5,168 bases of DNA, from positions 1 through 5,168 of the forward strand of contig BAAFSQ010000498.1 in NCBI GenBank assembly GCA_054661495.1. Reading direction: 5' to 3'. How positions within the stretch are numbered: the stretch's first letter is position 1; every line of letters begins with the position of its first letter. This document shows positions 1-5,168 of the stretch, piece by piece. The notes beneath the pieces are model-generated. The model saw only the letters and a program-made list of their open reading frames with translations. It did no database searches and was not told where the DNA came from. Origin of the DNA: Zygophlyctis sp. KS116. Taxonomy: Eukaryota; Fungi; Chytridiomycota. The translations under genes were made by a program, and so were the position numbers.

Positions 1-830
1 AACGTTTCTGTTCAACTATGAAGGATGGATCGAATGGTTTGAAAGCGGCTACTCTCAAGGCTGACAATTACTACAAAAGCCTACAAGATCAATTTGCTGG
101 CAACGACGAAATAGATGAACTCTTATATAGTCCCGAACAGTTGCCTGAAGTTTATTCGGGTTGTAGAGAAGAAAGTGAAATTGAGTTAGTTGTGGATAAA
201 TATCACTTCCCTGATTATAAATGGCCCGCTGGTTTGAAAGATGGTGATGTGTACCAGGTTAAAGAGAAGGAATACCGTTGCACTGATGAACATCATGTTC
301 ATGACCATGATCCTGATCAACTCAAACTTCCAGCAGACTACTCTGTTCACTTCACTCGTGGATTGGGTAATACTCTCCGTATATTTTTCCAATATGCATA
401 TGGACTCGCCGAAACCCCTGGCTTTAATGATACTAATGTTCCTCCAACCGGCCCAGTCTCAGAGTTCTTCTTCTTCAATCTTTTTGAAGCCACGGAGCGT
501 GAAGCAGTTGAAGGAATTTCTAAACTCCGTGAAATTCTGAAAGATGATTTATTGGTAAAATATGCTTCATCAAAGACGGCATTTAATGCAACATATATCG
601 TAACCATTGTATATGTGATTGGATTATTTGCTTGGATCTTTGAAAGCGCAAAGAGAGATTTAGCCCGTGAAATTCAACATAATCGTGGAATCATATTTAT
701 GATCCCAATTACTGTCATTTCAAAGAGTAAGCCAATCGTGGAATATGTAGAGAGAGTTTTGCAGGAATTGATAGGATAGCCGACTTTTAATAAATTGTCT
801 GGGATAATTAAAGTGTATGAGTAGATTCAG
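1..830 (+). repeat. Left arm of a long inverted repeat (partner 4334-5168); probably continues beyond the window
   Basis: Position i pairs with 5169-i as reverse complement through the coding part, with no indels in 1-779. Homology continues through the 3' UTR to ...gagtagattcag (830). The right arm has an extra 5 nt (gagtagatTAGATtcag). Confidence 0.98.
3..779 (+). CDS. 5'-truncated C-terminal part of a receptor-like membrane protein, paralog A (putative ectodomain, TM helix, short tail; resembles the C-termini of TmcB/TmcC-like multi-pass proteins)
   Basis: The frame is open from the window edge (RFCST-MKDG...) to TAG at 777-779. There is a hydrophobic helix TYIVTIVYVIGLFAWIF (aa ~192-208 counting from Met at 18) and a tail LAREIQHNRGIIFMIPITVI. 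Many differences from paralog B are synonymous, supporting coding constraint. The family assignment is from recalled motif resemblance only. Confidence 0.8.
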   Translation, partial: RFCSTMKDGSNGLKAATLKADNYYKSLQDQFAGNDEIDELLYSPEQLPEVYSGCREESEIELVVDKYHFPDYKWPAGLKDGDVYQVKEKEYRCTDEHHVHDHDPDQLKLPADYSVHFTRGLGNTLRIFFQYAYGLAETPGFNDTNVPPTGPVSEFFFFNLFEATEREAVEGISKLREILKDDLLVKYASSKTAFNATYIVTIVYVIGLFAWIFESAKRDLAREIQHNRGIIFMIPITVISKSKPIVEYVERVLQELIG

Positions 831-853
831 GTGTGTGGCTCTCATTGACTGAA

Positions 854-2213
854 ATGGGAGGAATTCTGTCTTGTTTAGTGTCCCAAAGCCTTTGTTGCAT
901 CGGGTCGAATGCTCTCTCATGCTGCTGTAAATGTTTTAATTCTTCTTCTGTTTCTACCAGAATTGGATATGCATTAATGTTTCTCTTAACTGCAACTCTA
1001 TCCTTTGTGTCTCTACTTCCTCAAGTGACTTTACAGATCAATCAAGTGCTAAAGATAAATTGTCTCGAATGCGTTGGAATTCTTTCGGTCTATAGGATAT
1101 GCGCCACCAATTGTATTGTACATTTCTGTCTTTGCTTGCTAATGATTGGCGTTGAATCTTCAAAAGATGCTAGATCTAAACTTCAGAATGGATTTTGGTC
1201 TCTCAAACTGTTTCTATGGATTTGCATACTAGGCCTTAGCATGTATGTCCCTAATCAGGTTTTTATCGGTATTGGAAAATATTTGGACATTCCTGGTGCA
1301 TTTCTATTCATTCTAGTTCAAGTAAATAGTTTTATTTAATTATTTCTAGGTTATACTACTGATTGATTTTGCTTATAATGTATCAGAAAATTTATTAGGA
1401 TTATGGGAAAATACTGAAGATAAGAGATACCTATATATATTATTGGGTATTACTAGTATATCAATACTTTTTACTATAGTGATAACTAGTCTTGGTATTG
1501 AATTTTAGATTTTTCTAATATATTATAGGGTATGCATGGTTTGGAAGTTCAAAATGTCAATTAAATCAATTTTTTATCACATTTAATTGGATATTTTGCC
1601 TTTTGGCTCTACTATTAAGTATAACTCCAAAAATCCAAGAACATAATCCAAAAGCTGGAATGTCTCAATCTTCAATGGTACTTTACAATCTAAATATTCT
1701 AGGTTATAATATATTCTACCTATTTGATTGCATCTGCAATCTCATCTGAACCACCAGGAGAAAATAAATGTGGTCCAGAAGTACATAATTCAAATACACA
1801 AACTTCAACTGTTTTAATGGGATCATTTTTTACTTTTTTAGCCTTGGCATATTCTACTTCTAGTACTGCAACTCAACATTCTAGTTTTTCAAGAGAAGAA
1901 ACACCTCTTTTAAATGATAATTCTGAAGAAATGGTTGATGATGAAACTCTTGGAGTCGTATATAATTACTCATTTTTCCATTTTGTATTTATTATTGGAT
2001 CAATGTATTTAGCAATGCTACTTACAAATGTATTTTTTATTTTTTTTAAATTTATAGTGGAACACTGTAAGCATCTCTGAATTAGGAGACTACTACATGG
2101 AAAAGAGTATAACAGCTGTTTGGGTCAAGATTATTTCGAGTTGGTGTGTGTTAATACTCTATTGTTGGACATTGGTTGCTCCCATGGTATTACCAGAGAG
2201 GACATGGGAATGA
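854..2213 (+). CDS. TMS1: SERINC/TMS1 family (serine incorporator, TDE) multi-pass membrane protein, ~414 aa; exons 854-1321, 1350-1494, 1529-1677, 1703-2029, 2058-2213
   Basis: Family motifs: Cys-rich N-terminus MGGILSCLVSQSLCCIG..CCCKC..STRIGY, SVYRIC, SSKDARSKLQNGFW, FILVQ|VILLIDFAY, PKIQEHNPKAGMSQSSM|VIIYSTYL, YNYSFFHFVFIIGSMYLAMLLTN|W, and WVKIISSWCVLILYCWTLVAPMVLPER. Removing four GT-AG introns gives a continuous 1245-nt frame ending in TGA. Confidence 0.93.
1322..1349 (+). other. Spliceosomal intron, 28 nt (SERINC intron 1)
   Basis: gtaaatag...tatttctag; removal joins FILVQ to VILLIDFAY. Confidence 0.9.
1495..1528 (+). other. Spliceosomal intron, 34 nt (SERINC intron 2)
   Basis: gtattg...ttttCTAATatattatag with a branch-like CTAAT at 1515; removal restores G-YAWFGSSKC. 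Confidence 0.85.
1678..1702 (+). other. Spliceosomal intron, 25 nt (SERINC intron 3)
   Basis: gtactttacaatctaaatattctag; removal joins QSSM to VIIYSTYL. Confidence 0.88.
2030..2057 (+). other. Spliceosomal intron, 28 nt (SERINC intron 4)
   Basis: gtatttttt...tttatag; removal restores the conserved MLLTN-W. Confidence 0.9.
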
Positions 2214-2315
2214 TTTGAATTGTAAATTTCTAAAACTAATTTGAGAAATATTTGAGAGTTTTGAGTAAAAACTTTTTGAGCAACAAATTTTTCTTTAAAA
2301 AAATATTTTTTTTGA
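2214..2315 (+). promoter_or_regulatory. AT-rich SERINC 3' end / YTM1 promoter region with four TTTGAG copies and an RRPE-like AAATTTTT
   Basis: This is the only intergenic gap over 100 bp. TTTGAG occurs at 2240, 2251, 2260 and 2275, AAATTTTT at 2285-2292, and an A7-TA-T7 palindrome at 2297-2312. The function is inferred from position. Confidence 0.4.
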
Positions 2316-3523
2316 ATGGAATCTCAAATTCTAGTTTCTTTCAAGTCTCGATCACCAGAGTATACAATCCCAGAGACTCCGATCCTAGTACCAACTAAAT
2401 TAAAAAGATTCGGACTCTCAGAAATCATCAATGTTTGTCTAGGAAATCAAGTTAAAGTTCCATTTGATTTTTTGATTCAAAATCAAATTCTAAAGACTTC
2501 GATTGAAGTATATCTCTCAAATTCTTGTCTCTCTAGAGAAACTACTCTAGAAATCGAATACATTCAGTCAATTCTGCCTCCAAAATTGAATAAATCTATT
2601 ACACATGATGATTGGATCTCTAGTATTGACTCAAAGGATGAATTATTTTTAACGGGATGCTATGATAAATTAGCTAGAATTTTGGACTCTAGAGGAAATA
2701 TTCTTTCAACTTTAAGCGGGCATTCAAAACCTATAAAATCTGTTTTATTTTTGCAACAAGACTATTGTTTAACTGGAGGACAAGATTCAAAGATTTTACT
2801 TCATAACCTTAAAAACTCAAAAGTAGAATCTGAATTTGCAGGGAATGCAAGTATAGAGTCTTTAAAAAATTTGGATAATTTAAAATTTGTGGCTGGAGAT
2901 TCTTTAGGGAAAATTCAGCTATTTTCGCCTGAAATTCAAGAATTTTCACAAACCAAGAGATCAAGTAAAAAATTAAAGTTGGATTCTGTAATTCCAGTTC
3001 AAAAATCTATTCAAGAATTTTCATTGCATTCAGGAATTGTTTCAGGACTAGAATATAATCAGAAAAATAATCAATTGTTTTCATCTGGGCATGATCATTC
3101 ATTAAGAGTATGGGATTTAGAAACTGCTTCAAATATATCAAGTATGAATGCACAAGTTCCATTTTTAAGCTTAAAGTTATCTAAAGACTCTTTGATTCTT
3201 TCTGGTCATTCTGATAATATAATTAGAATGTGGGATTCTAGATCAAATGGTAATTTTTTATATTAAAAGTATTAGATTGTATTTCTAAATTTCATGGACA
3301 TTCTAATTGGGTCTCTTCAGTTGATTGGTCTCCAAATATAGTTTTTCATTTTGCTAGTGCATCTTTTGATGGATCTGTTAAAGTCTGGGATATTAGATCT
3401 CAATCATACATGTTTAATTGCTCTTCTAACCAAGAAAAATATTTAGCTCTTGATTGGTCTGGAGAGTTGATTTCGGCTGGTGGTCAAGGGGAAAAATTGG
3501 AATTTTTTAAATCAAATGAATAA
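2316..3523 (+). CDS. YTM1: Ribosome biogenesis protein Ytm1/WDR12 (NLE ubiquitin-like domain plus WD40 repeats), ~393 aa; exons 2316-3249, 3276-3523
   Basis: N-terminal NLE-type motifs IPETPILVPTKLKRFGLSEIIN, VPFDFLI and LSRETTLEIEYI are followed by HDDWISSI, LTGCYD, GHDHSLRVWD and GHSDNIIRMWDSR. After a 26-nt intron the frame continues HGHSNWVSSVDWSP...ASASFDGSVKVWDIRS...LALDWS..ISAGG to TAA at 3521-3523. Confidence 0.93.
3250..3275 (+). other. Spliceosomal intron, 26 nt (YTM1 intron)
   Basis: gtaattttttatattaaaagtattag; removal is needed to reach the last WD40 repeats. An alternative in-frame AAG acceptor lies at 3269. Confidence 0.85.
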
Positions 3524-3545
3524 AACTTCTTTGAGTCATTGGGAA

Positions 3546-4285
3546 ATGAATGAGAAATTGAGATTACTGTCCATGGCAAAGGAAAAATCCACTGATTCCT
3601 TTTCCAAACAAAACAATTTAATCATAAAGTAAGGATTTTAGAGTTGATACTCTAGGACAAATGCAAAATACGCTGCAATCATACGAAAGCAGGAAGAAAG
3701 TATTCATGATTACAAGCATTTAGTTTACTTGTATAAAGTAGAGATCACTTCTCTCAAGTCCGATTACACTAAAAGAGAATCTGAATTCAATAGTCTAAAG
3801 GAATCGTTAAAAAAAGGAATTCTAAAGTCTCAATCAACTGCAAAGGAATTATTGGACAGTTTGAATGATTTATTACAACTTTTGATTCAAAAGCCTGATA
3901 TAATTGTAGAAAAAATTGTCAAAAAGGATACCAAAAAGGATTCAAAATCGTATTTACTTTTATCTTACAAATAGAAAATGGATTAAAAAACCTTCTGATG
4001 TCATAAGTATCATTTATGAATGCCCAGAGCCTCAGGAACTGAAAACTGATACGATAAAATGTAACTATGGTGATTCACCCGATCAACATGATCACAAGAA
4101 AAGTAATTCTTGTACAAAAATACCATCGCCACCAAAATCTGTGGAAAGTGATGATAGTCTTTCAAGCTCTAGGGTTCGGACAAGAAATCCTGTATCATAC
4201 ACTCTACCCAGTTTAAGATCAAAATTGAGAAAAGGTAAATTTAAAAAGATAAGTCTAAGGGGACCGGTATACGATTTCACAATAA
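3546..4285 (+). CDS. SGO1: Shugoshin (Sgo1-like), ~211-220 aa; exons 3546(or 3573)-3628, 3656-3949, 3975-4234, 4260-4285
   Basis: The spliced N-terminus FSKQNNLIIKTNAKYAAIIRKQEESI resembles the shugoshin coiled coil (QN.ELAK.N). The C-terminal basic SGO motif is RVRTRNPVSYTLPSLRSKLRKG|DRYT, and removing a 25-nt intron restores the KLRxGD ending. The start is ambiguous between in-frame ATGs at 3546 and 3573. Confidence 0.82.
3629..3655 (+). other. Spliceosomal intron, 27 nt (shugoshin intron 1)
   Basis: gtaagg...ctctag; retention gives an in-frame TAA, and removal gives QNNLIIK-TNAK. Confidence 0.8.
3950..3974 (+). other. Spliceosomal intron, 25 nt (shugoshin intron 2)
   Basis: gtatttacttttatcttacaaatag; removal links the frames of ORFs 3729-3974 and 3916-4308. 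Confidence 0.82.
4235..4259 (+). other. Spliceosomal intron, 25 nt (shugoshin intron 3)
   Basis: gtaaatttaaaaagataagtctaag; removal yields KLRKGDRYTISQ*. Confidence 0.7.
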
Positions 4286-4333
4286 ATCTTAATTCGCCTT
4301 TCAAATAATACCACTTATAAGTCTAAGATACAG

Positions 4334-5168
4334 CTGAATCTAATCTACTCATACTCTTTAATTATCCCAGACAATTTATTAAAAGTCACCTATCCTATCA
4401 ATTCCTGCAAAACTCTCTCTACATATTCCACGATTGGCTTACTCTTTGAAATGACAGTAATTGGGATCATAAATATGATTCCACGATTATGTTGAATTTC
4501 ACGGGCTAAATCTCTCTTTGCGCTTTCAAAGATCCAAGCAAATAATCCAATCACATATACAATGGTTACGATATATGTCGCGTTAAATGCCGTTTTTGAT
4601 GAAGCATATTGAGCCAATAAATCATCTTTCAGAATTTCACGGAATCTTGTAATTCCTTCAACTGCTTCACGCTCTGTGGCTTCAAAAAGGTTGAAGAAAA
4701 AGAACTCTGAGACTGGGCCGGTTGGAGGAACATTAGTATCATTAAAGCCGGTGGTTTCAGCAAGTCCATATGCATATTGGAAAAATATACGGAGAGAATT
4801 ACCCAATCCACGAGTAAAATGAACAGAGTAGTCTTCTGGGAGAAGCAATTCGTAAGGATCATGGTCATGAACATGATGTTCATCAGTGCAACGGTATTCC
4901 TTCTCTTTAACCTTGTAGACATCACCATCTTTCAGATCCGAAGGCCATTTATAATCTTGGAAGTGATCTTTATCCACTACCAATTCTATTTCACTTTCTT
5001 CTCTACAACCCGAATAAACTTCAGACAATTGTTCAGGACTATATAAGAGTTCATCTATTTCGTTGTTGCCAGCAAATTTATCTTGAAGACGTTTGTAGTA
5101 ATTGTCAGCCTTGAGAGTAGCCGCTTTCAAACCATTCGATCCATCCTTCATAGTTGAACAGAAACGTT
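4334..5168 (-). repeat. Right arm of the long inverted repeat (partner 1-830)
   Basis: The reverse complement of the window end (aacgtttctgttcaactatgaaggatgg...) equals the window start. The arm is 835 bp versus 830 bp because of a 5-bp microduplication near 4340. Confidence 0.98.
4390..5166 (-). CDS. 5'-truncated C-terminal part of a receptor-like membrane protein, paralog B (233/253 aa identical to paralog A)
   Basis: The ORF 4390-5151 is open to the window edge. It has 20 aa differences from paralog A, all within aa 21-181, and the last 72 aa are identical. Confidence 0.8.
   Translation of the reverse strand, partial: RFCSTMKDGSNGLKAATLKADNYYKRLQDKFAGNNEIDELLYSPEQLSEVYSGCREESEIELVVDKDHFQDYKWPSDLKDGDVYKVKEKEYRCTDEHHVHDHDPYELLLPEDYSVHFTRGLGNSLRIFFQYAYGLAETTGFNDTNVPPTGPVSEFFFFNLFEATEREAVEGITRFREILKDDLLAQYASSKTAFNATYIVTIVYVIGLFAWIFESAKRDLAREIQHNRGIIFMIPITVISKSKPIVEYVERVLQELIG

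What the first reader, a model, noticed from the sequence alone, without database searches (positions are those of the whole stretch)
1..5168. Candidate flip-flop locus: two convergent receptor-like paralogs form an inverted repeat around a SERINC-YTM1-shugoshin cassette
Seen: coding arms of at least 830 bp in inverted orientation flank 3.5 kb of unique DNA. Each arm has the structure identical (1-77), variable (78-590), identical (591-779). Established: recombination between inverted repeats inverts the intervening DNA, and this is how mating type is switched in Ogataea polymorpha and Komagataella phaffii. Inference: a crossover in the outer identical region would swap variable segments A and B between the two upstream gene bodies and promoters. 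If only one side is complete or expressed, this is a two-state switch for a surface receptor, possibly for mating, self-recognition or host sensing. A crossover in the inner 189-bp tract would flip only the three-gene cassette. I am not aware of such a system in this kind of organism. No recombinase is visible, so a static inverted duplication remains possible.
Basis: partly seen in the sequence, partly recalled or inferred. Interest (0 to 1): 0.85.

Follow-up and report, generated by a model that had tools for sequence, protein, structure and literature searches.

The report
Inverted duplicate of fungal sensor gene
A lake fungus carries two mirror-image copies of a large membrane-sensor gene around three housekeeping genes; the copies partly overwrite each other and could occasionally flip the DNA between them, but relatives gain, move and break these copies freely, so this looks like ordinary duplication rather than a built-in switch.

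Summary
The repeat is real: arms 1-827 and 4342-5168, 93% identical. The window is a whole short-read contig, so 'identical 1-77' is only the assembler's k=77 overlap. The arms are the 3' ends of two TmcB-family genes (TPR_TmcB, four PAS domains, several membrane helices). Contig overlaps and related genomes suggest an inverted duplication of about 7.5 kb (IFT20, SWEET, TmcB) around SERINC-YTM1-shugoshin. Arm B's site is shared with one relative; arm A is absent from three, so it is the derived copy. Gene conversion is evident, and the 513-bp divergent island (a predicted outer loop) is under purifying selection (dN/dS 0.18). Against a switch: no MAT genes, no recombinase seen, island edges that move between strains, broken copies in two near-identical samples, and different arrangements in related species. 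Closest known case: the Saccharomyces chromosome XIV flip/flop region, which inverts rarely and without known effect. Orientation and expression could not be tested, because the reads tool gave no data. An unresolved fork at the promoter/start leaves a two-state receptor switch possible (about 8%). Other first readers noted similar inverted duplications elsewhere in this genome (unchecked).

The parts
1..827 (+). Arm A: inner end of the left (derived) copy of the inverted duplication; last exon end and 3' flank of TmcB-like gene A
   Evidence: absent upstream of SERINC in three relatives
1..77 (.). Assembly k-mer overlap node shared by both contig ends (k=77), not a biological boundary
   Evidence: window = whole contig C498; 77-nt overlaps at C504/C555, C555/C1088, C1137/C557, C331/C946
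3..779 (+). C-terminal 258 codons of TmcB-like gene A: second outer loop, last membrane helix, cytosolic tail; the frame is open at the contig edge
   Evidence: continuous with the TPR_TmcB/PAS body in one 1594-aa ORF of a relative; topology
78..590 (+). Divergent island: 52 nt and 20 aa differences between A and B; dS 0.34, dN 0.06, dN/dS 0.18
591..779 (+). 189-nt identical tract (gene-conversion tract): last membrane helix and tail
   Evidence: the same change at 674 in both copies of a sister sample
854..2213 (+). SERINC gene (several introns of about 20-35 nt); its ATG lies 27 nt from the end of arm A
   Evidence: PF03348; synteny and protein matches
2316..3523 (+). YTM1/WDR12 ribosome-biogenesis gene (NLE + WD40)
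3546..4308 (+). Shugoshin-like gene (coiled coil + Shugoshin_C); exon limits approximate
   Evidence: PF07557
4342..5168 (-). Arm B: inner end of the right copy, at the site shared with a related species; ORF end 4390-5166
   Evidence: a single TmcB gene at this site and strand in L054

Best explanation
A lineage-specific inverted segmental duplication in a gene family that is often gained and lost. Starting order: ADIP-like gene, SERINC, YTM1, shugoshin, TmcB (reverse), SWEET, IFT20, COX10 (pieced together from relatives). About 7.5 kb (IFT20 promoter to TmcB 3' end) was copied in reverse into the short gap between the ADIP-like gene and SERINC; template switching during repair or replication is the likely cause (inferred). 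Non-allelic gene conversion keeps most of the two copies alike (shown for the inner tract; inferred for the body from its collapse in the assembly). A 513-bp island in the outer loop has escaped, probably because about 10% divergence now hinders strand exchange, perhaps helped by selection for two loop variants (inferred). A rare crossover can invert the interior, as in the Saccharomyces chromosome XIV region, but this would be an unregulated by-product with little effect, since both genes remain and their upstream DNA is duplicated too. The proteins are TmcB-type membrane sensors with cytosolic PAS domains and no catalytic output domain found; the extra copy most likely adds dosage or a second loop variant.
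For: Shown: body contig C557 has TPR_TmcB above cut-off and four PAS domains; a relative's single 1594-aa ORF covers this body and the arm. Outer edges: C331 (syntenic to the DNA upstream of SERINC in a relative) and C946 (COX10, syntenic to the right flank) end in the same 77-mer and share 173 bp at 98%, which is the IFT20 promoter. C1137 (SWEET + TmcB start) overlaps C557 by 77 nt. Conversion; the island's edges differ in L068 and L050. Turnover: TmcB is absent from this locus in L052, lies between YTM1 and shugoshin on the + strand in L075, is single at site B in L054, is broken in L050/L078, has a 75-nt in-frame deletion in L068, and is a 99.98%-identical tandem pair at another locus in L076. 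C-terminal domains group by species rather than by locus (support 93/94, not starred). At least six TPR_TmcB loci in the genome. Literature model: PMC9731477.
Against: The 7.5-kb repeat is reconstructed from contig overlaps and other samples; the IFT20 piece and about 770 nt between C557 and the arms are missing from the assembly, and no read depth could be obtained. The break between C1137 and C557 shows a second, unseen path near SWEET, the promoter or the start codon, so the copies may differ upstream. An old island (dS 0.34) with both frames intact inside an otherwise homogenised repeat is not fully explained by drift.
Confidence: 0.62

Rival explanations
1. Same duplication, but one copy in this strain is already incomplete at its 5' end (lost promoter, start or body) and is decaying; the locus is static.
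For: Unseen second path at the C1137/C557 junction. In sample GROS21-1 one piece lacks most of SWEET, the promoter and the start and carries stops, frameshifts and a 1.08-kb deletion; the other has lost most of the gene. Arm A has the longer protein branch (0.061 vs 0.014); roughly 13 nonsynonymous/9 synonymous changes on A against 7/13 on B.
Against: Both ORF ends are intact and dN/dS is 0.18. The A/B difference in rates is not significant (Fisher P=0.14) and rests on distant outgroups. Another strain's body is intact, with 19 synonymous and 4 nonsynonymous differences.
Confidence: 0.22
2. Two-state receptor switch: only one copy has a working promoter/start, and a crossover anywhere in the roughly 5-kb identical body swaps outer loop A or B onto the expressed gene.
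For: The layout allows it: a shared body and two intact alternative C-terminal loops that stay divergent; the assembly forks near the promoter/start; a scaffold link in GROS21-1 joins COX10-IFT20 to the copy that is not next to shugoshin, which would mean a flipped order (the link crosses an N gap and a repeat, so it is weak).
Against: No recombinase or MAT gene in the window or the flanks examined; ordinary genes on both sides, no telomere seen. No diversifying selection. Island edges are not fixed. In a sample 98.6% identical in YTM1 the B copy has lost the whole island. Four related species lack the pair. All contigs that can be phased keep the same inner order (A-type 3' flank by SERINC, B-type by shugoshin).
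Confidence: 0.08
3. Assembly or amplification artefact: two haplotypes or an amplification chimera joined into one contig.
For: Short-read assembly with collapsed repeats; both contig ends share one node.
Against: Independent assemblies show each junction: arm A to SERINC in L050, and arm B to shugoshin in L050 and L068. The arms differ by 52 mostly synonymous changes, unlike a chimera. Four runs from four studies hold over half of the window's words.
Confidence: 0.04

Closest known systems
Saccharomyces chromosome XIV flip/flop (FF) region with Centroid-gene inverted repeats (Salzberg et al. 2022, PMC9731477)
   Same: Multi-kb, gene-containing inverted repeat around unrelated genes; homogenised by gene conversion; collapses in short-read assemblies; the repeat holds a gene family that duplicates often; inversion would be a by-product of non-allelic recombination.
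   Different: There the 4.2-kb repeats have the same boundaries in eight species and both orientations are documented; here the repeat is young, absent in relatives, decays in some strains, holds a 10%-divergent island, and no second orientation has been shown. Interior 3.5 kb against 24 kb.
Flip/flop mating-type switching, FF1/FF2 (Ogataea polymorpha, Komagataella phaffii; PMC6692504, PMC5720833)
   Same: Inverted repeats, with outer and inner identical tracts around two alternative segments.
   Different: Those systems move MAT genes between an expressed site and a site silenced by a centromere or telomere, on a starvation cue. Here there are no MAT genes, no silencing element was found, and the layout is not conserved.
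TmcB/TmcC-like membrane proteins (Pfam PF25474 TPR_TmcB with PAS domains; name from Dictyostelium 'tiny macrocysts', from my own knowledge)
   Same: TPR_TmcB above cut-off, four PAS domains, several membrane helices, expanded family; Atlas neighbours are TPR_TmcB clusters of chytrids and ciliates.
   Different: No paper on the family's function was found in the library. The outer loop has no Pfam family and no significant fold match.
Phage and plasmid invertible C-terminal cassettes (Mu Gin/G segment, P1 Cin, R64 shufflon; from my own knowledge)
   Same: A constant N-terminal part with two alternative C-terminal parts facing each other.
   Different: Those use a dedicated site-specific recombinase at short fixed sites and have one constant part; here the constant part seems to be duplicated, the boundaries wander and no recombinase was seen.

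Membership tests
Flip/flop mating-type switch (FF1/FF2) | Inverted repeat flanking an invertible region | tested here: met
   (outer extent inferred from contig overlaps)
Flip/flop mating-type switch (FF1/FF2) | Alternative MAT genes inside the region | tested here: not met
   interior is SERINC, YTM1, shugoshin; arms are TmcB-type
Flip/flop mating-type switch (FF1/FF2) | Centromere or telomere silencing one side | tested here: inconclusive
   both flanks are gene-dense and syntenic with relatives; centromeres cannot be located in this assembly
Flip/flop mating-type switch (FF1/FF2) | Both orientations within a clone, induced by a cue | not testable with these tools
   Read laying returned no data; listed runs are held only as contigs
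Homogenised-IR recurrent inversion (Saccharomyces FF type) | Multi-kb gene-containing inverted repeat | tested here: met
   about 7.5 kb by sum of pieces; partly inferred
Homogenised-IR recurrent inversion (Saccharomyces FF type) | Concerted evolution of the two copies | tested here: met
   189-nt tract; change at 674 shared by both copies within a sample; strain-specific tract edges
Homogenised-IR recurrent inversion (Saccharomyces FF type) | Both orientations among strains | tested here: inconclusive
   inner order constant in three assemblies; outer order unresolved; one weak scaffold hint of a flip
Homogenised-IR recurrent inversion (Saccharomyces FF type) | Repeat kept across related species | tested here: not met
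   absent or differently arranged in L052, L053/L054, L075, L080
Site-specific invertase cassettes (Gin/Cin/shufflon) | Dedicated recombinase gene next to the cassette | tested here: not met
   none in the window or in flanking genes named in syntenic loci; the whole genome was not searched
Site-specific invertase cassettes (Gin/Cin/shufflon) | Short fixed crossover sites at the constant/variable border | tested here: not met
   the border shifts between strains
TmcB/TmcC-like proteins | TPR_TmcB domain above the curated cut-off | tested here: met
   C557 ORF 80 bits vs cut-off 27; link to the arms inferred through a relative's full ORF
TmcB/TmcC-like proteins | PAS domains and several membrane helices | tested here: met
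   four PAS stretches; hydropathy of the full-length paralog

The most novel reading that the evidence does not exclude
The two copies share about 5 kb of identical body but differ at the promoter/start (the unresolved fork), so homologous crossover in the body switches which outer loop (A or B) is expressed: a recombinase-free phase variation of a PAS-containing membrane receptor in a zoosporic fungus.
Probability: 0.08. Interest if true: 0.85.

Novelty: new member of a known kind. Interest (0 to 1): 0.36.

Why it matters
As most likely read, it is a young example of a homogenised inverted repeat in a chytrid-like fungus, caught at several stages of gain and decay in natural samples. It also points to the unstudied TmcB/PAS sensor family, which keeps re-duplicating at two loci. 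The 20 amino-acid differences in one outer loop, on an apparently shared body, give a natural pair for finding out what that loop binds. If the switch reading held, it would be a new kind of surface-receptor phase variation in early-diverging fungi, relevant to host or partner recognition.

Tried and rejected
So there is no depth, joint or expression evidence. Before it, they had gone out (inside a SERINC ORF; whole window). My own scripts read the whole window file for local alignments; one of them printed a 46-nt stretch from near 4300, none printed those places. The arm protein found nothing in metagenome contigs or by exact look-up. No contig other than the window holds the 77-mer, so the adjoining piece is missing, probably under the assembly's size limit of about 1 kb. 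Idea that C555 is the body of arm A: rejected, because C504-C555-C1088-C11 is a third paralog beside PSMD13/THOC2, and its breaks match the tandem pair in L076. Fold searches of the arm model (pLDDT 80) gave no significant match: Foldseek best E 1.5, Atlas TM at most 0.31, VIA best Z 8.4 on a generic helix hairpin. The weak Pfam hit to TraS (E 0.03-0.07) is noise. The bacterial promoter scan does not apply to a eukaryote. Paper searches found nothing on TmcB function. The species could not be named. Spliced gene models were not joined for searches; single exons or ORFs were used by reference.
Full report
Observation. The window holds an 827-nt inverted repeat (1-827 and 4342-5168, 93%) around 3514 nt of unique DNA. 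Each arm ends an intact reading frame pointing inwards. The interior is SERINC, YTM1 and a shugoshin-like gene. The window is the whole contig C498 of a 12.7-Mb assembly in 1175 pieces. Other contigs overlap by exactly 77 nt, so the 'outer identical region' is the assembler's k-mer node: the contig stops where the two copies become identical. The organism is probably a chytrid-like lake fungus: it has IFT20 in a near-identical sample, introns of 20-35 nt, Quaeritorhiza as the only named hit for the gene body (46%), and Chytridiomycota clusters as nearest Atlas neighbours. I could not name it.

What the arms encode. The arm protein belongs to a family with several members in this genome. Contig C557 encodes TPR_TmcB (PF25474, 80 bits) and four PAS domains. 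In a relative, one 1594-aa ORF matches C557 at 81% and continues into the arm sequence, so the arms are the C-terminal ends of TmcB-type proteins. Hydropathy of a full-length paralog puts the arm's variable part in the loop between the last two membrane helices, on the side opposite the PAS domains. No catalytic output domain was found. The loop has no known family or fold match. 'Receptor-like' is therefore reasonable, but it is an inference.

How large the repeat is. Relatives give the gene order. L053/L054 (one species, YTM1 64% identical): ADIP-like gene, SERINC, YTM1, shugoshin, one TmcB on the reverse strand, SWEET. L052 (71%): SERINC, YTM1, shugoshin, SWEET, IFT20, COX10, with no TmcB. 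In our genome C331 matches the left flank and C946 (COX10) the right flank. Both end in the same 77-mer and share 173 bp at 98%; L078 shows that this piece is the IFT20 promoter and stops at the IFT20 start codon. C1137 holds SWEET and the TmcB start and overlaps C557. The simplest graph is: two flanks, one collapsed path IFT20-SWEET-TmcB body, two arms. The pieces sum to about 7.5 kb. The repeat ends 25, 34 and 27 nt from the start codons of COX10, the ADIP-like gene and SERINC. IFT20 and about 770 nt before the arms are missing from the assembly. Which flank joins which arm cannot be read from this assembly. Arm A is the derived copy, since L052, L053 and L080 have no TmcB end before SERINC.

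Gene conversion and selection. The 189-nt identical tract is far beyond chance and is not explained by conservation. In the near-identical sample L050 both copies share a change at position 674 that both window copies lack, the mark of concerted evolution. In L068 the B-position copy carries A-type bases at 78-90, 144, 417-419, 590 and 814, so the island's edges are not fixed. Within the island dS is 0.34 and dN/dS 0.18: old divergence under purifying selection, much older than the split from L050 (YTM1 98.6% identical). A may evolve faster than B, but not significantly.

Turnover in relatives. In sample GROS21-1 the B copy has lost its start, most of the body and the whole island, and has an internal stop. 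A second piece in that sample lacks most of SWEET and the start and has stops, frameshifts and a 1.08-kb deletion. The same sample has two intact, 99.98%-identical tandem copies at the PSMD13/THOC2 locus, and their ends match contig breaks in our genome. These come from a lake metagenome, so strains may be mixed. L068 has a 75-nt in-frame deletion in its B copy. L075 has TmcB between YTM1 and shugoshin on the other strand. Sample KAVA23-1 has an intact body, 99.25% identical to C557. A conserved switch would not be expected to look like this; a family that duplicates locally and loses copies would.

Mechanism. Shown: inverted paralogs, conversion tracts, derived origin of A, turnover. Inferred: a 7.5-kb repeat, homogenised body, origin by template switching. 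From established knowledge: a crossover between inverted repeats inverts the interior; in the Saccharomyces case this is attributed to about 4% of conversion events, no flip was seen in about 53,800 mitoses and 950 meioses, and no phenotype is linked to orientation (PMC9731477). An inner crossover here changes no protein. An outer crossover swaps loops A and B between two bodies, which matters only if the copies differ upstream. One sign that they might: C1137 and C557 are separate contigs, so a second path, absent from the assembly, branches near SWEET, the promoter or the start codon. That path could be a single-base variant, a dead copy as in GROS21-1, or the silent side of a switch. I give about 0.62 to two working copies, 0.22 to one dying copy, 0.08 to a switch and 0.04 to an artefact.

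Comparison. It works most like the Saccharomyces chromosome XIV flip/flop region, but fails that case's conservation across species, and a second orientation is not shown. It is not a member of the flip/flop mating-type systems, which need MAT genes and a silencing centromere or telomere (PMC6692504). It lacks the recombinase and fixed sites of invertase cassettes. Other first readers list further inverted duplications in this genome (unchecked), which would make this a common event here rather than a special device.

Limits. Depth, orientation and expression are therefore untested. No listed run is RNA. Spliced models were not joined for searches.

Verdict. A real, well-supported inverted duplication of a TmcB/PAS sensor gene with partial homogenisation; new member of a known kind; interest 0.36. 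A small chance remains of a two-state receptor switch, which one long-read and one RNA experiment would settle.

Noticed in passing
L076:1-12362 (ENA GROS21-1); own contigs C504, C555, C1088, C11: A third TmcB locus beside PSMD13/THOC2 is a tandem pair of 6.06 kb at 99.98% identity in a near-identical sample; our genome's contig breaks fall at the same ends, though it is only about 96% identical, which suggests a shared pair kept alike by conversion. An unrolled assembly loop is not excluded.
   Followed up: partly
L052, L054, L075 and the window: The TmcB gene takes four states around shugoshin: absent, upstream on the same strand, downstream on the opposite strand, and an inverted pair. Inverted duplication followed by loss of one copy would move the gene along in this way.
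   Followed up: partly
window 780-854; C946:1306-1331; C331 end: The repeat's ends lie 25-34 nt from three start codons. SERINC's upstream DNA is now the 3' end of TmcB gene A, and the ADIP-like gene sits behind a copy of the IFT20/COX10 promoter, so both may have changed promoters.
   Followed up: no
L050:3898-3961: A 64-bp piece of the PAS region sits out of order at a deletion junction in the broken B copy, as expected from template-switch repair.
   Followed up: partly
L078:1466-1677: 211 bp of unknown origin replaces most of SWEET and the TmcB promoter/start in the second broken copy; it is not found in our assembly.
   Followed up: partly
G000: C52, C68, C98, C196, C434, C553, C555, C557 and others: Expanded TmcB/PAS membrane-sensor family with no output enzyme found; no paper on its function in the library.
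   Followed up: partly
window 1316-4259: Candidate introns of about 20-35 nt in all three interior genes, and very short gaps between genes (for example 22 nt between YTM1 and shugoshin).
   Followed up: no
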